DNA of 64,000 bases from Rebecca billardiae RCC1528. Its lineage: Eukaryota; Protista; Haptophyta. The notes under the pieces are model-generated. The model had not been told where the DNA came from. It searched no databases and saw only the letters and a program-made list of their open reading frames with translations. The translations under genes were made by a program, and so were the position numbers. The stretch is from contig OZ251229.1 of NCBI GenBank assembly GCA_965240325.2, forward strand, positions 2,418,001-2,482,000, read 5' to 3'. Every line of letters begins with the position of its first letter. Position 1 is the first letter of the stretch. Of the stretch, positions 9,570 through 16,835 are shown piece by piece.

Positions 9570-10999
9570 ATCGGCGGCGGCGGCGAGAGGAGCTCGCCCG
9601 CCAGCGACGTGTCGGCGGTGCTGCCGTCCGTGTGGATGGTCGAGACCTGCGTCGGCGTGAGCACGCCCGTGTACAGGCCCAGGTCGTCGATCCGGCCGGC
9701 GAAGGTCGTGGTGAAGCCGACGCCGTTGGTCGAGGAGGCCAGGCGCATCGTCGTCGACGCCGAACCGGCGCCCGTCGTGAGCGTCTTCGCCGCCAGCGTC
9801 TTGGATAGCGAGCCGTCGATGTAGATCTTGTACGCGCCGTCGTCGTACGTGACCGCCACGTGGTACCACGTGTCGGTTGTCGTCACGGCGCCGTTGGCCA
9901 CGAGCCGGTTGTTCGTGCCGCCGGTGAAGACGGCGACGCTGCCCGAGGACAGGCCGATGTCGAAGGCGTTGAGCGTGCCCGACGCGCCGTACGACAGGAT
10001 CGCCGGGGTGGTGCCCGCGGTCGAGCGCTCGGCGGCCGTCTGGCGGAACCAGAAGGCGAAGGAGCGCGTCGCCGCGGCCGAGATGTTCGTCGCCGCGGCC
10101 TCGCCGCCGATGGCGTCCACGGTGTAGACGGTGGAGCCATCGAGCAGGAGCGCCTTGCCCACCTCGCCGTCGTCGTAGCTCGTCGTGCCCGACGACAGCG
10201 TGAGCCCCGTCACGTCGTTGTTGAACGTGAAGTGCGCGAACAGCGAGGCGGCGTACGGCACGCCGCTCGCCGAGATGGCCGCGACGCCGTCGTTGTAGAT
10301 GCTCGTCACGTCCGCCGAGCTGAGCTCGGCGGAGTGGATGGCGAGGTCGTCGATCGCGCCGTTGAACGCCGTCGTCGTGCCCGTGCCCGTGCACACCTTC
10401 ATCACCGTCGACACCGTCGTGAGCGTCGTGGAGGCAGGCGTGGCCGACTCGTCGACGCCGTTGAGGTAGAGCGCCTGCGACGTGCCAGACGAGGTGAGGA
10501 CCACGTGGTACCACGTGCTCGCGTCGGCGCTGAGCTGCGTGCTGCTCGTCATGAAGCCGATCGTCGAGTACTGCACCTGCAGCTCGCGCGAGCTGCTCAG
10601 CTGCAGCTCGAGCAGGTCCTCGTCGAACGTCGCCTCGGTGCCGACCGAGACGATGCCCATCGCGTTGGCGCTGGTGCCGTCCACGCGCACCCACAGCGAG
10701 ATCGACGCGGCGTTGGCGCCCGAGATGGCGCTGATCGCCGCGTCGGACACGAGCGTGTTGGCGCCGTTGCAGTCGAAGGCAGAGACGATCTGCCCCTCGA
10801 CGTACGTCGCTGAGCCGGCGGAGACGGTGAGCGTCGTCGAGTCGCCGCTCACCTCGGACGTGCGCGCGTTGTCAAAGCGGAAGTGGTGCGCGAGGTTGGC
10901 CGTCACCGCGGCCGACGCGGGCCGGCCCAGCGCGAGCGCCAGCAGCGCCAGGCCGACGCCGCGAGCGTGCAGCGCGAAGCGCGAACGGGCAGCAGCCAT
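5569..10999 (-). CDS. Secreted/surface glycoprotein: signal peptide, 4 LamG/pentraxin-like domains, SPPP extensin-like linkers, MAM domain, Cys-rich tail
   Basis: ATG 10999 (MAAARSRFALHARGVGLALLALALGRPASA). Four repeats with WYHVAVTY..G...LY.DG...G.IDDL motifs and (SPPP)n tracts. MAM motifs CxFE..CDW..TGPSVDHS..GYYIFIES..GDIAIDDV. Predicted GT-AG introns 6049-6177 and 5717-5867 join in frame to a last exon ending FCYCQEVS* at 5569. Confidence 0.85.
6715..7825 (-). repeat. Coding low-complexity (Ser-Pro3-5)n tract; shorter tracts at about 8515-8745 and 9415-9585
   Basis: GGCGGCGGGCTC-type tandem units encode SPPP on the - strand. Confidence 0.9.
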
Positions 11000-11652
11000 G
11001 GGCCCAGCCGAGGTGCAGCGGTGGCTTCGAGGGCCGCGCGAGCAAATGGCGCTCGCCGCCGCCGCTGCTGCTGCTGCTGCTGCTGCTGCGCGCCCGCGTA
11101 CACGAGCTGACCTGCGCGGCGCGGCCGCGGCGCGCGCGGGTCGGAACGCGTCGGGAGGGACGTGGACGCATGGGTCAGCCGCCACGCGCTGGGCGCTCCG
11201 CCGTGGGACCGCGGCGCACGGTGCTGCGCAGCCAGTGCCGCAGCGCGCCGTGTCACACCGCGCGCGCCGGCTGCGGTCCCGCCCATCGCCGAGGCTGGGG
11301 CCTGGCCCACGGCCTGCGGGCGCGCCGCGCGCTGCCGCGGGCGCGGCTGGCACCACCACATGGCGCGCGCTGCGCCCGTGCACCCCGGGCCGGCCTGCCG
11401 CGAGGGCGCACGCAACGGGTCACACACCTGCCCCCGCGGTTGCAGGTCAGTTACGCTCTCGCCAGTGGTTGGCGCACGCACGGTGGCGGCGGCACGGCTC
11501 ACGGTTTGGAGGAGCCGTTTTCGTGCCGATGAGGGCCGATAAACTCGACGCCGTCGTAAAATCGAAATGGAAATTCGGGGCGGAGCTTTTGCGCCATTTT
11601 CGCGTCGCGATTTCATTTTCTGCGGCAAAATTAACGCCTGGAGGCGCGCACG

Positions 11653-13050
11653 ATGTCGTCCGTCCGGCGGAGAGCGGCGGCTTGGGTCCTCGCGCTTGCC
11701 AGCGTGTGTTCGGCACCCGCCGAGGTGAAGCCGCCGTATCTGTGGTCGAATACCACCGCGTTTTTTGCGCTGAAGTACGAGCGGGTCGTCGCCCGGGTCC
11801 GCACGCGGCAGCAGCGGCAGCGCGCCGCCGACGTGCGCGAGATGTGCGCAGCGACGAAGCAGCTGCAGCTGCGGGTCCGCGCAGCGGCCGACGAGTTGCG
11901 AAAGCGGTGGGCGCCGGCAGTCCCCGATCGCAGGTGCGCCGCCGAGCTGGAGTCTGTCATCCGCGCCGAAGCCAACCTGAGCGTCGGCTGCCCCTTGCCC
12001 TCGACAGTGTGGTGGCACGCGGTGCCCGACCCGATCACGGAGGAGACGGCCGCGAGCTGCGCGGATCTGCGCCGGGGGAAGCACATGGCGCCGCCCGCGG
12101 GGCTTCGGCGGGTGGTCTTCTATATCGAGGCGTACAAGCAGCCCGCGCTCGTGGCGCGCACCATCCGCCGACTCCGCGCGCCGGGGCACGCCTTCATCGT
12201 GCACGTGGACAAGCACGTGGGCTCCGACTTTGTGCACGAGATGGCGGCGGTCGGGCCCGACGTGTGCGTGCTGCGCTCCGGCGTGATCATCTACCTCACA
12301 GGGACCGACGTGCACTCCGTGTGGTCAGTGCAGCGCTGGCTACTCACGCACCGGGTGCGCTTCGACTCCTTCGTCTCGCTCACAGGCGGGGACTATCCGT
12401 TGCACGACGGCGCGCGCGCGGCGCGACTGCTGGCGGCCGCTGGCGACGTCACGTGGTACCCGCACCCGCCGATGCGCCCCGAGCAGCGGCGAAGGGTGGA
12501 CGGCGACAAGGACCTGTACATCAAAAAGTTCCGCCGCATCTTCTCGTACGGCTTCGGCTGCCGGGCGACGCGCTCGTACCACAGCTTGCGAATGCGCCCG
12601 CAGTGGATCGCGCGCCGCGTGCCGACGCTGCGCCTGCGGCAGACGCCGCCGCTCACGACCGGCGTGTACGCCGCGCGCACCGTGCGCGAGCTGCAAATGA
12701 ACGACGACGCGGTCGCGGCGTTGCTCTTCATGTCGAAGACCAAGCAAGCGGCGGCGGAGCACTACTGGGCGAGCGCGCTGACGCTGCCCGTCTTCGACTC
12801 GCATCTGATCCACCGGGCGCCGTGCTTCATGTCCTGGCACTTGGGCGTCGGCGCAGACGGGGTGCACAACACAATCCTCACGAGAGAGCAGTGGGCGTTC
12901 ATCGAGGCGGCGATCCGCGGCTGCGCGCTCTTCGCGCGCAAGTTCAACCTGGACACGGACGAGGCAGTGCTGGATATGATCGACAACGCCACCGCGCCGA
13001 GCGGGCCACCAGAGATCGCGGCGGCTCTCCGCAAGTCGTGTGGGATGTGA
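11653..13050 (+). CDS. Glycosyltransferase family 14 (Core-2/I-branching / xylosyltransferase-like)
   Basis: N-terminal hydrophobic signal/anchor. GT14 motifs FYIEAYK..., FIVHVDK, FVSLTGGDYPL, EHYW and LFARKF. Confidence 0.8.
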   Translation: MSSVRRRAAAWVLALASVCSAPAEVKPPYLWSNTTAFFALKYERVVARVRTRQQRQRAADVREMCAATKQLQLRVRAAADELRKRWAPAVPDRRCAAELESVIRAEANLSVGCPLPSTVWWHAVPDPITEETAASCADLRRGKHMAPPAGLRRVVFYIEAYKQPALVARTIRRLRAPGHAFIVHVDKHVGSDFVHEMAAVGPDVCVLRSGVIIYLTGTDVHSVWSVQRWLLTHRVRFDSFVSLTGGDYPLHDGARAARLLAAAGDVTWYPHPPMRPEQRRRVDGDKDLYIKKFRRIFSYGFGCRATRSYHSLRMRPQWIARRVPTLRLRQTPPLTTGVYAARTVRELQMNDDAVAALLFMSKTKQAAAEHYWASALTLPVFDSHLIHRAPCFMSWHLGVGADGVHNTILTREQWAFIEAAIRGCALFARKFNLDTDEAVLDMIDNATAPSGPPEIAAALRKSCGM

Positions 13051-13056
13051 GCAGGC

Positions 13057-13147
13057 GGCCTGTTTTAATTCTACGAGAGCCGCCCAACGGCGACATCAGC
13101 CAAAACGCGGTGAAATGGCGGCTTCAGTCCACTGGTGCGGGTGCCGG
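13057..13147. mobile_element. Partial end of the GGCCTGTTTT-TIR DNA element family (see 37211-38119)
   Basis: GGCCTGTTTTAATTCTACGAGAGCC...GGCGACAT...AATGGCGGCTT...CTGGTGCGGG aligns with the reverse complement of about 38030-38119. No partner TIR was found nearby. Confidence 0.65.
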
Positions 13148-13370
13148 TGGTAGTGCAGAGTAGTGGCGGCCCCGTGGGGCACGTCGTTGAGCTGGCGCAT
13201 CCTCGTACTAAGAGTAAGACGCTGAGCTGTGCTGGCGAAAGACGTTGCCAAGACATGCGCTTCGACTTGCCGCGGGACAAAGGTCAAAGCGCCAACCGTC
13301 CACCGTCAATTGAATAGAAAAAAAAGTGCTGAGCACTGAGCAGCGGTCGGCCGCGGGCGATGGCGGTTCG

Positions 13371-16300
13371 ATGGCGGGGAGGGGCTCCCCACCCCATCAC
13401 GACCAGGACGAGCACGAGGAGGGCGAGTCGGACGAGGAGGAGCGCCACCGCAAGGCCGTCGCCGTGGCCGAGGCGCTGCGCGAGGCGTCGCCCTCTCTGC
13501 AGCAGCGCCGGCGCACCTCGCGCGACGACCCCGCGTACCTCGCCAACTTCCACGCCAACTCGAGGCTGCACTTCATCGGCGTGTGGCGCGAGCGGTACGA
13601 GGAGCTGTTCGCGCTCCGGCCGGCGCCGCCCGCCCTGCCGCCCACGCCCGATGGCGGCGAGCGGACGATCCTGCACGTCGACATGGACTGCTTCTTCGCC
13701 TCGGTCGCCGCGGCGGGGCGGCCGGCGCTCGCGCGCGTGCCGCTCGCGGTGACGTGGGCGTCCGGCCGGGCGGCGGCGAGCTCGGAGCGCTTCAGCGGCG
13801 GCGAGATCTCGTCGGCGAACTACCTCGCGCGCGCGTTCGGCGTGCGCGCCGGCATGTGGACCACCGAGGCGCGCGCCCTCTGCCCGCGCCTCGTGCTGGT
13901 GCCGTACGAGTTTGAGCGGTACGTGGGCGTGGCGCGCGCGCTCTACGAGGCGCTGCACGCGCTCACGCCGCACGTCGCGGCGGTGTCGTGCGACGAGGCG
14001 TACGTCGACTGCACGGGGCTCGTGCGCGGCAGCGCCGACTGGGCGGAGGAGGCGCTCGCGCTCGCGCACGACGTGCGCGAGCGCGTGCGGCGCGCGACCG
14101 CCGGCTGCTGCGCGTCGGTCGGCGTCGGCCCCAACCGGCTGCTCGCGCGCATCGCGACGGCGGCGGCGAAGCCGGACGGCGCGCGCACGCTGCGCGCGTC
14201 GGACGCGGCGGCGACGCTCGCGCCGATGCCCGTGCGCGAGCTGCCCAGCGTCGGCCCCAAGCGCGCCGCGCGCCTGCACGAGCTCGGCGTGCGCGCGTGC
14301 GCCGACGTGCGCGCGGCGGCCGCGAGCGGCGAGCTCGCGCGCGCGCTCGGCGCCAAGGCCGCCGCCGAGCTCGCGGCGCTGGCGCGCGGTGAGGACCCGC
14401 GACCGTGGCCCGCGGAGGGGCGCAAGTCGCTCAGCGCGCAGGCCTCGTGGGGCGTGCGCTTCGCCACCGACGCCGAGGTCGACGGCTTCGCGCGCCAGCT
14501 GTGCGACGCGCTCGCGGACAAGGCGGCGCGCGCGCGCGTGTGCGGCGCGCGCCACGTGGGCGTGCACGTGTGGGAGGCGAAGGCGGAGGCGGAGCAGCGG
14601 TACCAGCCGAAGGGCTTCGTCGGCCACGGCGACTGCCACATGCGCGCGCGCGCCGAGACGCTCCGCCGGCCGCTGAGCCCCACCGCCGCCGCGCTCACGC
14701 CATGCGCGCTCGCGCTCGTGCGCGCGCTCGGCGTGCCGCCCGCGCGCGTGCGCGGCATGCGCGTCGAGCTCAGCCAGCTCAGCTACGCCGCGCACGCCGC
14801 GCGGCGCAGCCCCGACGCGGCCGAGGGACGCGCCACCGGCGGCGGCGGCGGCGGCGCCGGCGCCGGCGCCCCATCGCGCACGCCCGGCGCCTCGCCCTCG
14901 CCGGCGCGCGCGCGGCGCATCGACGCGATGCTGCCGCGCACCGCGCCGCCCGCGGCCGTGGGCGCGCCGCGCGCACCGCCAGCGGCCGCGCCGGCGGCCG
15001 CCGCGGGCGTGGGCGGCGCAGAGCCGCGCGCGCGGCGCGCGGACGCGGCGGCGCTCGCCGAAGTGCCGCGCTTCGGCGGCGGCGGCGGCGGCCTGGACGC
15101 GAGCGCGTACTTCCAGGGCAAGCGGCAGCGCACGCGCGAGGCGCTCAACGAGCCCGGCGGCGGCGGCGGCGGCGGCGCCGCCGCCGCCGCCGAGGGCGGC
15201 AGCGCGCTCCTGCGCGGCGTGACGCTCTGGGTGGACGGGCTGACCACGCCGCCCGCCGACGCGCTGCGGCTGCTCGTGCTGCAGCACGGCGGCGCATACG
15301 CACCCGCGGGCAACTTTGGCGCGGCCGGCGCGGGCGTGACGCACATCGTGTGCGAGAGCGTGCGCGCCGGCCGAGCGGACGCCCTCGCGCGCCGCGCGCT
15401 CGCCAGGGGCGGCGGCGGCGCGCGTCGATGCGAGCTGGTGCGGCCGCAGTGGCTGCTCGAGAGCATCGCGGCGGGGCGCAGGCTGCCCGAGTGCGAGTAC
15501 GCGCTCGAGGGCCTCCTCGACCCGCGCCAGCGCACGCTGGCGCTCGGCGCGCGCGAGGCCGCGCCCGCCGCGCTCAGCGCCGGCTCGGAGCGGCAGCCGC
15601 CATCGTCGCCGCCGGCGCGCGAGCGCGGCGGCGCCAGCGGCGCGCGCGACGAGCTCGGCTCCACGGCCGAGTCGGAGGACGACGCGGAGGACGCGCAGCA
15701 GGGCGGCACGCTGCGCGACGTGCTGTGCATGTCGCAGGTCGCGGTGCCGCCGCTCGAGCAGCTCGACATGCGCGAGCTCGCCCAGCTGCCGCGCGCCATG
15801 CGCGCGCGCGTGCGGCACGCGTACGAGCAGCGCGGCCACGCCTGGCCGCGCGCGCACGCCGAGCACGCCGAGCACGCCGAGCACGCGGCCGCGGCGCAGG
15901 CGGCGCAGCGGCCGCCGCCCGCGCTCGGCTGCGCGCCCCCGGTGGGCGCGGAGGCCGACGAGGCCGAGGCCGCCGCCGGCGCGGATGGCGACGCTGCCGT
16001 CGCGCGCGCGCTCGAGCGCATGGGCTACGAGCGAAGCGCGGCGCTGGCCGCGGCGCGCGCGGTCGCGGGCGTGACGCTCGCCGCTCACGTCGCGGCCGCC
16101 GTCGACTGGCTGTGCGCGCGAGAGGGCGCGCCCTCGGCCTACGCCAGCCGCGAGGAGGCCGGCGCTGCCTGCGCGCCCGCGCTGCCGCCGCGTGCGCACG
16201 AGCCGCCGGCGGCGGCGCCCGCCGCCGCGCCCGTGCCGTCGGCGCCCGCGGGGCGCGCGGCAGCATCCGGCGCCGCGCCACGCGCGCACGCCGCGGACGC

Positions 16301-16835
16301 GGCATCGCTCGTGCCGAGCCGGCTGGAGGACGTCGACCCATCTGTCCTCGCCGCGCTGCCTGCCGACATCAGGCGCGAGCTACAGGCCGCGCTCGGCGCC
16401 GCGCCTTCGGAGCACGTTGCGCATCGCCCCGCCGTGCGAGCGAGCGCGCACGCAGGCGGCTCGGTGCCGGCCGCGCTCCCCGAGCTGTCGGCCGACGCCG
16501 ATGCCGCCTTCGCCCTAGTGCGCGAGCTGGCGGCGAGATGCGGTGGCGCGGCGGCGTCGGACGCCGAGCTTGACGAGGGCGAGCGGCAGCTCACGGCGCA
16601 CGCGACGGCGCTGGCGCGCGCGGCCTCTCTCGAGGCGCTGGAGGTGCTCGTGCGGCGCGCCGCGCGGCTGCTGGGCCGCGCCGAGCGCTGGCGCGTGCGG
16701 CTGCTGCGCTTGCTGGACGCCGTGGACGACGCGGTCCTCGCGCGCGTGGGCGGCTCGCTGGCATGCACGACGCAGGCGAGACGGGAGCTGCTCTCGGCCG
16801 GCTCGGCTTCGCGCGAAGCCGGGCCGCCATCGTAG
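13371..16835 (+). CDS. REV1: DNA repair protein REV1 (Y-family deoxycytidyl transferase) with an internal BRCT, UBMs, UBA and a C-terminal helical domain
   Basis: N-digit FHANSRLHFIGVWR; ILHVDMDCFFAS; EISSANYLARAFGVRAGM; REV1-type SCDEAYVD; little finger RKSLSAQASWGVRF. BRCT at about 15205-15507. UBM-like LAQLPRAMR and VDPSVLAALPADIRREL; UBA LERMGYERSAA...AVDWL. Confidence 0.92.
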   Translation: MAGRGSPPHHDQDEHEEGESDEEERHRKAVAVAEALREASPSLQQRRRTSRDDPAYLANFHANSRLHFIGVWRERYEELFALRPAPPALPPTPDGGERTILHVDMDCFFASVAAAGRPALARVPLAVTWASGRAAASSERFSGGEISSANYLARAFGVRAGMWTTEARALCPRLVLVPYEFERYVGVARALYEALHALTPHVAAVSCDEAYVDCTGLVRGSADWAEEALALAHDVRERVRRATAGCCASVGVGPNRLLARIATAAAKPDGARTLRASDAAATLAPMPVRELPSVGPKRAARLHELGVRACADVRAAAASGELARALGAKAAAELAALARGEDPRPWPAEGRKSLSAQASWGVRFATDAEVDGFARQLCDALADKAARARVCGARHVGVHVWEAKAEAEQRYQPKGFVGHGDCHMRARAETLRRPLSPTAAALTPCALALVRALGVPPARVRGMRVELSQLSYAAHAARRSPDAAEGRATGGGGGGAGAGAPSRTPGASPSPARARRIDAMLPRTAPPAAVGAPRAPPAAAPAAAAGVGGAEPRARRADAAALAEVPRFGGGGGGLDASAYFQGKRQRTREALNEPGGGGGGGAAAAAEGGSALLRGVTLWVDGLTTPPADALRLLVLQHGGAYAPAGNFGAAGAGVTHIVCESVRAGRADALARRALARGGGGARRCELVRPQWLLESIAAGRRLPECEYALEGLLDPRQRTLALGAREAAPAALSAGSERQPPSSPPARERGGASGARDELGSTAESEDDAEDAQQGGTLRDVLCMSQVAVPPLEQLDMRELAQLPRAMRARVRHAYEQRGHAWPRAHAEHAEHAEHAAAAQAAQRPPPALGCAPPVGAEADEAEAAAGADGDAAVARALERMGYERSAALAAARAVAGVTLAAHVAAAVDWLCAREGAPSAYASREEAGAACAPALPPRAHEPPAAAPAAAPVPSAPAGRAAASGAAPRAHAADAASLVPSRLEDVDPSVLAALPADIRRELQAALGAAPSEHVAHRPAVRASAHAGGSVPAALPELSADADAAFALVRELAARCGGAAASDAELDEGERQLTAHATALARAASLEALEVLVRRAARLLGRAERWRVRLLRLLDAVDDAVLARVGGSLACTTQARRELLSAGSASREAGPPS

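What the first reader, a model, noticed from the sequence alone, without database searches (positions are those of the whole stretch)
15072..15507. Domain-permuted REV1: N-terminal helix + BRCT module sits after the polymerase core
Seen: the ORF begins almost directly with the N-digit and catalytic core. FGGGGGGLDASAYFQGKRQR followed by a complete BRCT (LLRGVTLWVDGLTTPPADALRLLVLQHGG...VTHIVC...VRPQWLLESIAAGRRLPECEYAL) lies downstream of the little finger, in the same stop-free frame. A UBA-like domain lies between two UBM-like motifs. Established: yeast, plant and animal REV1 carry this helix (roughly FG.YM..K..KL) plus BRCT at the extreme N-terminus and use UBMs, not a UBA. Inference: a lineage-specific module relocation plus UBA gain, possibly altering PCNA/ubiquitin or DNA-end recruitment.
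Basis: partly seen in the sequence, partly recalled or inferred. Interest (0 to 1): 0.7.

Follow-up and report, generated by a model that had tools for sequence, protein, structure and literature searches.

The report
REV1 polymerase with relocated BRCT module
This alga's REV1 DNA-damage-bypass polymerase carries its DNA/PCNA-binding "M1 helix + BRCT" module after the catalytic core instead of at the front, and has gained a ubiquitin-binding UBA domain; the layout is real, shared by a small clade of pavlovophyte-like relatives, and apparently undescribed.

Summary
One stop-free 1169-codon ORF (13326-16835, +) keeps GC3 at 0.80-1.00 (0.88 or more in all but one 40-codon block) in a single frame. 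It encodes a REV1 orthologue ordered N-digit, polymerase core, little finger, linker, M1 helix, BRCT, UBM-like, UBA-like, UBM, C-terminal domain.

A profile built only from 41 canonical N-terminal REV1 M1-BRCT modules hits residues 595-744 at 79 bits (E 2e-23) and nothing else in the window. The predicted fold matches the human and yeast REV1 BRCT structures best.

The same order occurs in four other independent assemblies, including Pavlovales sp. CCMP2436, where core and most of the BRCT share one annotated exon. These were the only hits below 1e-30 among 1.84 billion representatives. The other 108 collected REV1s with both domains have BRCT first.

On a polymerase-core tree the permuted proteins form one clade inside a group whose other members lack a detectable BRCT: Prymnesium, dinoflagellates and a pelagophyte.

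The UBA-like segment recurs in all five members and in no other collected REV1.

No reads or RNA runs were listed, so transcript continuity and function are untested.

Verdict: a real, clade-specific new variant of a known enzyme, of moderate interest. The scan had not noted REV1 elsewhere.

The parts
13326..16835 (+). Complete REV1 ORF (1169 codons including the stop). The first ATG is at codon 16 (nt 13371). It reads as a single coding exon.
   Evidence: GC3 is 0.80-1.00 in frame throughout and is lost in the flanks. PDB phmmer gives human REV1 at 2.8e-53.
13512..13661 (+). REV1 N-digit. The SRLH motif (S79 R80 L81 H82, nt 13560-13571) aligns with yeast S323 R324 L325 H326.
   Evidence: alignment to 8tlq_B and 3gqc_A; these residues are invariant.
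13677..14159 (+). Y-family palm and fingers (Pfam IMS), with the catalytic DMDCFF and SCDE motifs.
   Evidence: IMS, 9.1e-37, residues 118-278; invariant D119, D121, D223, E224.
14202..14396 (+). Thumb / helix-hairpin-helix.
   Evidence: IMS_HHH_1 3.3e-07, IMS_HHH 4.3e-05.
14421..14789 (+). Little finger / PAD (Pfam IMS_C).
   Evidence: 2.4e-07, residues 366-488; alignment runs to residue 485.
14790..15071 (+). Low-complexity Ala/Pro/Gly-rich linker between the PAD and the M1 helix. Its length varies greatly among relatives, from about 12 residues in P0003 to about 190 in P0001.
   Evidence: coding GC3 0.95.
15072..15152 (+). M1-type helix (FGGGGGG...Y595 F Q G K599 R Q R602...), the REV1 motif that normally sits 10-20 residues upstream of the N-terminal BRCT.
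   Evidence: Y20, K24, K27 nearly invariant across 45 modules; helix at module residues 17-32; PMC13250573.
15153..15206 (+). Poly-Gly/Ala spacer between M1 and the BRCT.
15207..15557 (+). REV1-type single BRCT (residues 628-727) plus the conserved post-BRCT tail (to residue 744, a 'PRQRTL' motif).
   Evidence: invariant G, G, P, GG, TH, P, W; 79.4 bits from the canonical-only HMM; best fold hits are REV1 BRCT structures; Pfam BRCT 628-714 is sub-threshold.
15726..15845 (+). UBM1-like motif (...PPLEQLD...AQLP...), conserved in P0001 and P0002.
   Evidence: phmmer hits to the UBM region of plant and green-algal REV1 are weak (E 0.0025-0.2). Not detected by Pfam.
15978..16136 (+). UBA-like domain (RMGY loop ... 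VDWL).
   Evidence: Pfam UBA_7 17.6 bits, below the cut-off. The profile of 3 clade members against PDB returns UBA domains as top hits (1whc 4.3e-4, 2cpw 8.3e-4). Also found in P0083 and in CCMP2436 locus L004, and in no other collected REV1.
16317..16400 (+). UBM2 (VDPSVLAALPADIRRELQ).
   Evidence: Pfam UBM 23.5-25.3 bits against a cut-off of 23.3.
16491..16790 (+). Putative REV1 C-terminal domain (helical bundle that docks Rev7 and RIR partners).
   Evidence: Pfam REV1_C E 0.11. Conserved in P0001, P0003, P0083. In the clade profile against PDB the top 8 hits are all REV1 CTD structures, but at E 0.3-1.

Best explanation
The ORF is the REV1 orthologue (deoxycytidyl transferase and translesion-synthesis scaffold) of a very GC-rich, pavlovophyte-like haptophyte. 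In it the conserved M1-helix-plus-BRCT module has been moved as a unit, from the N-terminus to a position between the little finger and the ubiquitin-binding region. A UBA domain has also been added between the two UBMs.

Shown:
- The catalytic core keeps every REV1 hallmark: the SRLH Arg/Leu of the N-digit, the catalytic carboxylates, the PAD.
- The module keeps the residues that are invariant in canonical REV1.
- The arrangement is one continuous coding frame.
- The arrangement is conserved in a monophyletic set of five genes.

Inferred:
- REV1 modules are joined by long flexible linkers. M1-BRCT acts by binding duplex DNA, PCNA or a recessed 5'-phosphate near the polymerase. Tethering it to the C-terminal end of the PAD, which itself lies on the duplex, therefore probably preserves its roles: recruitment, and restraint of Pol zeta on undamaged DNA.
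- The UBA most likely adds to, or in relative P0003 replaces, UBM-mediated reading of ubiquitinated PCNA.

The origin of the layout is unresolved. It could be an intragenic rearrangement, for example tandem duplication, fusion and loss. It could also be re-insertion of a REV1-derived module into a lineage whose relatives lack any BRCT.
For: Identity and core.

Module identity:
- Canonical-only HMM 79.4 bits, E 2e-23, covering M1 through the post-BRCT tail.
- 45-sequence alignment with invariant G, G, P, GG, TH, P, W and near-invariant Y, K, K of M1.
- The fold model's best hits are REV1 BRCT structures.

Continuity: GC3 periodicity in one frame across all 1169 codons. No other REV1-type BRCT exists anywhere in the 64-kb window.

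Conservation:
- P0001 and P0003 are single ORFs on multi-gene genomic contigs.
- P0083 is a metagenome fragment with the same order.
- In CCMP2436, exon 1 covers residues 1-718, that is the polymerase, the linker, M1 and most of the BRCT.
- These are the only four hits below 1e-30 in 1.84 billion representatives, with a gap from 201 to 88 bits.

Phylogeny: the permuted clade has 100% SH-aLRT support on the polymerase-core tree. It sits within a 100%-supported group of 21 whose other 17 members have no BRCT.

UBA.

M1 function and DNA contacts: PMC13250573.
Against: - No RNA or read data could be obtained, so a single full-length transcript and protein is inferred, not shown.
- Generic Pfam BRCT and UBA models are below their curated cut-offs in the window protein.
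- CTD support is weak.
- The first structure model, built on only 4 sequences, was poor.
- All functional statements are by analogy with yeast and human REV1.
- A second, canonical REV1 paralogue elsewhere in the genome cannot be excluded with these tools.
- Only the best 150 of 1201 profile hits were inspected, so more divergent permuted REV1s could exist.
Confidence: 0.85

Rival explanations
1. Re-acquisition rather than intragenic relocation. The ancestor of the haptophyte, dinoflagellate and pelagophyte-type REV1 group had already lost M1-BRCT. The pavlovophyte lineage later inserted a REV1-derived M1-BRCT cassette, from a paralogue or a foreign REV1, downstream of the core.
For: On the polymerase-core tree the permuted clade sits within a strongly supported group in which all 17 other members lack a BRCT. 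No BRCT lies within +-10 kb of the Prymnesium or L006 genes. The module's best phmmer hits are green-algal-type REV1s.
Against: On the module tree the four permuted modules group together and are not nested inside any canonical lineage; their only weak join is a long-branch pairing. The similarity to green algae may simply reflect shared GC-rich composition. The trees are unrooted, so repeated loss from a relocated or N-terminal ancestor is equally possible.
Confidence: 0.25
2. Gene-model or assembly artefact. The polymerase core and the BRCT-UBM-CTD part belong to two genes, or a chimeric join, and only appear fused because stop-free frames are common in 80% GC DNA.
For: Long spurious ORFs do occur here on other frames and on the other strand. 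No reads could be laid.
Against: GC3 of 0.80-1.00 holds in exactly one frame through the core, linker, module and tail. The same collinear single ORF occurs in three other assemblies, and one annotated exon in CCMP2436 spans both parts. Even as two genes the BRCT would still not be N-terminal to the core.
Confidence: 0.03
3. The module is retained in the DNA but is functionally decaying or optional. It might be removed by splicing in the main isoform, in a lineage that is heading for the BRCT-less state of its relatives.
For: Relatives do without a BRCT. Published vertebrate work reports that damage tolerance needs the C-terminus but not the BRCT (Ross et al. 2005, cited in PMC13250573; seen as a reference title only, not read). 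The BRCT has lineage-specific insertions and weak Pfam scores.
Against: All residues invariant in canonical REV1 modules are kept in all four full permuted sequences, despite about 50% overall divergence. Codon bias is undiminished. No splice-like break is evident.
Confidence: 0.07

Closest known systems
Canonical eukaryotic REV1 (yeast Rev1, human REV1, plant REV1)
   Same: N-digit with SRLH Arg/Leu, Y-family palm, fingers, thumb and PAD, M1 helix plus a single BRCT with the same invariant residues, UBM, and a C-terminal helical domain.
   Different: M1-BRCT lies after the PAD instead of at the N-terminus. A UBA-like domain sits between the UBMs. The linkers are extremely Gly/Ala/Pro-rich. 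The CTD is very divergent.
BRCT-less REV1 of Prymnesium parvum, dinoflagellates, Chrysophaeum and related metagenomic sequences (P0023, P0004/5/10/20/22, P0029, P0006-13)
   Same: These are the closest polymerase cores (45-48% identity). The protein starts almost directly with the N-digit, and they fall in the same strongly supported tree group.
   Different: They have no detectable M1-BRCT, UBA or UBM. Some carry other additions: a second Y-family core, a DNA ligase, or an AAA_33 domain.
UBA domains of RAD23 / UBA-UBX proteins
   Same: Three-helix pattern with an MGF/MGY loop. The clade profile's best PDB hits are UBA domains. RAD23 UBA domains bind Y-family polymerase catalytic domains in trans (PMC10842004).
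   Different: Here the UBA is built into the polymerase itself. It falls below Pfam cut-offs in the window protein, and ubiquitin binding is untested.

Membership tests
REV1 (Y-family deoxycytidyl transferase) | Y-family catalytic core: palm and fingers (IMS), thumb, little finger/PAD | tested here: met
   Pfam IMS 9.1e-37, IMS_HHH_1 3.3e-07, IMS_C 2.4e-07. The best PDB sequence hits are REV1.
REV1 (Y-family deoxycytidyl transferase) | N-digit with the Arg that pairs with incoming dCTP and the adjacent Leu (yeast R324/L325, the SRLH motif) | tested here: met
   Query S79 R80 L81 H82 aligns to yeast S323-H326 and is invariant among the clade members.
REV1 (Y-family deoxycytidyl transferase) | Catalytic carboxylates (DxD in the first palm motif; DE in SCDE) | tested here: met
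   D119, D121, D223 and E224 are present and invariant.
REV1 (Y-family deoxycytidyl transferase) | M1 helix plus a single REV1-type BRCT present | tested here: met
   Canonical-only HMM 79.4 bits; alignment invariants; Foldseek top hits are REV1 BRCTs.
REV1 (Y-family deoxycytidyl transferase) | M1-BRCT located at the N-terminus, before the N-digit (canonical architecture) | tested here: not met
   The module is at residues 583-744, after the PAD (which ends at 488). There is no upstream BRCT in the window.
REV1 (Y-family deoxycytidyl transferase) | Ubiquitin-binding motifs (UBM) C-terminal to the core | tested here: met
   UBM at 1001-1018 scores 23.5-25.3 bits against a cut-off of 23.3. The first UBM-like motif (about 801-840) is supported only by weak phmmer hits and clade conservation.
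REV1 (Y-family deoxycytidyl transferase) | C-terminal domain that docks Rev7/Pol zeta and RIR partners | tested here: inconclusive
   Pfam REV1_C E 0.11. In the clade profile against PDB the top 8 hits are all REV1 CTD, but at E 0.3-1. Binding cannot be tested here.
REV1 (Y-family deoxycytidyl transferase) | dCMP transferase activity and Pol zeta scaffold function | not testable with these tools
   Needs biochemistry or genetics.
UBA domain | Sequence match to UBA profiles (three-helix bundle with MGF/Y loop) | tested here: inconclusive
   Window: UBA_7 17.6 bits against a cut-off of 27. P0003: UBA 22.3 against 22.4. Clade profile against PDB: UBA domains at 4.3e-4 and 8.3e-4, and nearly all further hits are UBA. 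No structure model was made for it.
Circularly permuted protein (strict sense) | Old N- and C-termini joined and new termini opened, so the whole order is rotated | tested here: not met
   Only the N-terminal module moved. UBM and CTD remain C-terminal, giving order B-A-C rather than B-C-A.

The most novel reading that the evidence does not exclude
The relocation and the UBA gain together rewire how this TLS scaffold is recruited and restrained. M1-BRCT, hung directly on the little finger (only about 12 residues away in relative P0003), would act as a built-in duplex or 5'-end clamp, or as a brake on Pol zeta. That would be the first Y-family polymerase to use a UBA. It would also be a natural experiment showing which REV1 functions depend on module position.
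Probability: 0.25. Interest if true: 0.6.

Novelty: new variant of a known kind. Interest (0 to 1): 0.45.

Why it matters
REV1 architecture (BRCT, core, UBMs, CTD) is treated as invariant from yeast to plants and animals. Current models of TLS polymerase switching and Pol zeta restraint assign specific roles to the N-terminal M1-BRCT region.

A conserved natural variant with that module on the other side of the core offers three things:
- It tests whether position matters or only tethering does.
- It gives a template for engineered yeast or human constructs.
- Together with the BRCT-less REV1s of other haptophytes and dinoflagellates, it shows that REV1 accessory modules are more evolutionarily plastic in algae than is assumed.

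A UBA in a Y-family polymerase would add a third class of ubiquitin reader, besides UBZ and UBM, to this enzyme family. The impact is mainly comparative and mechanistic, not field-changing.

Tried and rejected
1. Reads and RNA: the look-up of sequencing runs listed no run. Transcript and assembly checks rest on codon bias and cross-assembly conservation.
2. The word-indexed search restricted to the BRCT region returned nothing, probably because poly-Gly/Ala words swamped the candidate list. It was replaced by the exhaustive profile search.
3. The first AlphaFold run on the 4-sequence alignment gave pLDDT 49 and was not used. The 45-sequence alignment gave a usable model.
4. The metagenome contig scan with the module alignment found no relative.
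5. Upstream ORFs 10482-13160, 11653-13047 (+) and 10903-12312 (-) carry no BRCT or other relevant domain. The EXS/Rad10 neighbours seen in L001 and L004 were not found next to the window gene.
6. A hidden BRCT exon near the Prymnesium and L006 genes: none within +-10 kb.
7. Literature: no paper in the library links REV1 to haptophytes or reports a UBA or permuted REV1.
Full report
**What is there**

The window is very GC-rich (71.5% overall; 81-83% inside the gene against 63-70% in the flanks). ORF 13326-16835 on the + strand is 1169 codons long, with its first ATG at codon 16.

Stop-free frames are common in such DNA: there is a 1001-codon ORF on the opposite strand. I therefore tested coding continuity by codon-position composition. 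GC3 is 0.80-1.00 in every 40-codon block of this one frame, from the N-terminus through the linker, the BRCT segment and the tail. The periodicity disappears on both sides of the ORF. The gene therefore reads as one continuous coding exon.

**Identity**

Pfam finds the Y-family core: IMS 118-278 (9.1e-37), thumb HhH 293-357, and little finger IMS_C 366-488. The best solved-structure relatives are human REV1 (3gqc, 2.8e-53) and yeast Rev1.

The REV1-specific N-digit is present. Query S79-R80-L81-H82 aligns to yeast S323-R324-L325-H326. The catalytic DMDCFF and SCDE motifs are intact and invariant among the closest relatives.

The N-digit starts about 57 residues into the ORF, or about 42 residues after the first ATG.

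**The displaced module**

The finding's coordinates (15072-15507) correspond to residues 583-727. Three lines of evidence show that this is the REV1 M1-helix-plus-BRCT module.

- Sequence against yeast. phmmer against full-length yeast Rev1 aligns query 625-738 to yeast 162-260 (BRCT), while query 57-485 aligns to yeast 301-735. The order is swapped.
- Alignment and profile. An alignment with 41 canonical N-terminal modules and 3 relatives shows the invariant G, G, P, GG, TH, P, W of the BRCT, the near-invariant Y, K, K of the preceding helix, and even the conserved post-BRCT 'Q..L' tail. To avoid circularity I built an HMM from the 41 canonical modules only. It hits residues 595-744 at 79.4 bits (E 2e-23), covering model positions 19-151 of 156. 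The next-best piece in the six-frame translation of the whole 64-kb window scores 3.3 bits, so no N-terminal BRCT exon is hidden upstream.
- Fold. An AlphaFold2 model on the 45-sequence alignment has pLDDT 76, with the BRCT core above 90. Its best Foldseek hits are the human REV1 BRCT (2ebw, 1.6e-7) and yeast Rev1 BRCT entries (5umv, 4id3, 2m2i, and 8tlq_B over 140 columns), ahead of other BRCTs apart from one XRCC1 BRCT entry (2d8m) ranked among them.

Generic Pfam BRCT models are below threshold (12-17 bits). That explains why precomputed annotations list no BRCT for these proteins.

The helix is the published M1 motif. It lies 10-20 residues upstream of the BRCT and contacts the major groove of duplex DNA in the yeast Rev1-Pol zeta cryo-EM structure. 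It is required for Rev1 to restrain Pol zeta on undamaged DNA (PMC13250573).

**The tail**

After the module come, in order:

- A UBM-like motif at about 801-840. It is conserved in P0001 and P0002 and has weak matches to plant UBM regions.
- A UBA-like segment at 885-937.
- A UBM that passes the Pfam cut-off, at 1001-1018 (23.5-25.3 bits against 23.3).
- A divergent C-terminal helical domain. Pfam REV1_C gives E 0.11. In a clade profile against PDB the top eight hits are all REV1 CTD structures, but only at E 0.3-1.

The UBA is sub-threshold in Pfam for the window protein (17.6 bits), and P0003 reaches 22.3 against a cut-off of 22.4. However, a profile of three clade members retrieves UBA domains from PDB (1whc 4.3e-4, 2cpw 8.3e-4), and nearly all the weaker hits are also UBA.

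The same profile finds the segment in metagenomic P0083 (5e-7). It also finds it in the CCMP2436 locus, between the UBM exon and the CTD (1e-4). It finds it in none of the roughly 220 other REV1 or BRCT proteins collected.

Relative P0003 keeps the UBA but shows no recognisable UBM.

**Is it an artefact?**

However, the same order is found in four other independent assemblies:

- P0001 is a single ORF on a 12-kb Logan contig with neighbouring genes.
- P0003 is a single ORF on an 8-kb Logan contig.
- P0083 is a JGI metagenome fragment with the end of the PAD, then the module, then the UBA.
- P0002 is the annotated gene of Pavlovales sp. CCMP2436. Its first exon (L004 5001-7154) encodes residues 1-718, that is the core, linker, M1 and most of the BRCT. 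A CTD homologue lies further downstream, beyond the partial gene model.

Misassembly or a chance fusion of frames is therefore very unlikely.

**How common is it?**

An exhaustive profile search of the module against 1.84 billion representative proteins gave only four hits below 1e-30 (P0001, P0002, P0003, P0083). The score then drops from 201 to 88 bits.

Among all 227 proteins collected:

- 108 have BRCT before the polymerase.
- 4 have the polymerase before the BRCT; these are the same four.
- 23 have the polymerase only.
- 92 have the BRCT only; these are mostly short fragments.

On a polymerase-core tree (78 sequences, quick IQ-TREE), the window protein and its three full-length relatives form a clade with 100% SH-aLRT support. 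That clade lies inside a 100%-supported group of 21 whose other 17 members have no detectable BRCT. This group includes Prymnesium parvum, five dinoflagellate proteins, Chrysophaeum and metagenomic sequences. No REV1-type BRCT lies within 10 kb of the Prymnesium or L006 genes in any frame.

On a tree of the module alone, the four permuted modules group together (89) and are not nested in any canonical lineage. Their only weak join is a long-branch pairing.

So the arrangement is clade-specific. Whether it arose by intragenic rearrangement or by re-insertion of a REV1-derived cassette into a BRCT-less ancestor cannot be decided from unrooted trees.

**Organism**

The closest named relative is Pavlovales sp. 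CCMP2436. The composition (71.5% GC) and the single-exon structure fit what is published for Diacronema lutheri: 73.25% GC and 45% single-exon genes (PMC8379373). The identification as a pavlovophyte-like haptophyte is an inference.

**How it probably works (inference)**

REV1 is a beads-on-a-string scaffold. M1-BRCT binds duplex DNA, recessed 5'-phosphate junctions and PCNA with low affinity, and it modulates Pol zeta (PMC13250573). Because the little finger itself sits on the primer-template duplex, a module tethered to its C-terminal end should still reach its site. The tether is about 95 residues in the window protein and ranges from about 12 residues (P0003) to about 190 (P0001). I therefore expect function to be retained, perhaps with changed geometry.

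The UBA most plausibly adds to or replaces UBM-based reading of ubiquitinated PCNA. An alternative is intramolecular contact with the catalytic domain, as RAD23 UBA domains make with Y-family cores in trans (PMC10842004). None of this has been tested.

**Comparison and novelty**

By its core features the protein is a REV1. It fails only the positional criterion of the canonical architecture. It is not a strict circular permutation, because the order is B-A-C.

No paper in the searchable library connects REV1 with haptophytes or describes a permuted or UBA-bearing REV1. The scan's own notes contain no earlier REV1 finding.

I rate it a new variant of a known kind, of moderate interest.

**Limits**

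- Only the best 150 of 1201 profile hits were inspected.
- A canonical paralogue elsewhere in the genome cannot be excluded.
- The trees used the quick search and include compositionally biased, long-branched rows.
Its exons were compared by reference only.

Noticed in passing
P0004, P0005, P0010, P0020, P0022 (dinoflagellate REV1 homologues): Each protein carries a REV1-type core followed by a second, DinB/Dpo4-like Y-family core in the same polypeptide, with no BRCT. One of them (P0005) is a transcript-derived complete ORF.
   Followed up: partly
L006:7896-12205 and protein P0018: In a gene-dense metagenomic scaffold, an ATP-dependent DNA ligase gene lies 77 bp upstream of a BRCT-less REV1 on the same strand. 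In P0018 the ligase domains and the REV1 core are one 1176-residue protein.
   Followed up: no
P0029 (Chrysophaeum taylorii), residues 440-723: A BRCT-less REV1 core is followed by an AAA_33 (P-loop kinase-like) domain, 2.8e-17.
   Followed up: no
P0003 / L002:380-2896: This clade member has only about 12 residues between the little finger and M1. It keeps the UBA but has no recognisable UBM, which suggests that the UBA can substitute for the UBMs.
   Followed up: partly
L001:7966-9006 and L001:2166-3870; L004:1462-3042: In relatives, an EXS-family gene lies upstream of REV1 (both L001 and L004), and a Rad10/ERCC1 gene lies convergent just downstream (L001). This neighbourhood was not found around the window gene.
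   Followed up: partly
window 13326-16835 versus flanks: The gene body is 81-83% GC with GC3 near 0.97, against 63-70% GC in the flanking DNA. The drop at the stop codon is sharp.
   Followed up: yes
window 13371-13500 (residues 16-58): A short acidic N-terminal stretch is followed by a conserved Ala-rich helix-like motif (invariant A44, A46, A48, L51) ahead of the N-digit. It is shared by the clade and its role is unknown.
   Followed up: no
same genome, another piece (scan note s1-353184): An earlier first-reader note describes a Pol delta/zeta-like B-family polymerase with two NZF fingers and a PIP-like box in this genome. If real, REV1's partner polymerase may also carry unusual ubiquitin readers. 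Not checked here.
   Followed up: no
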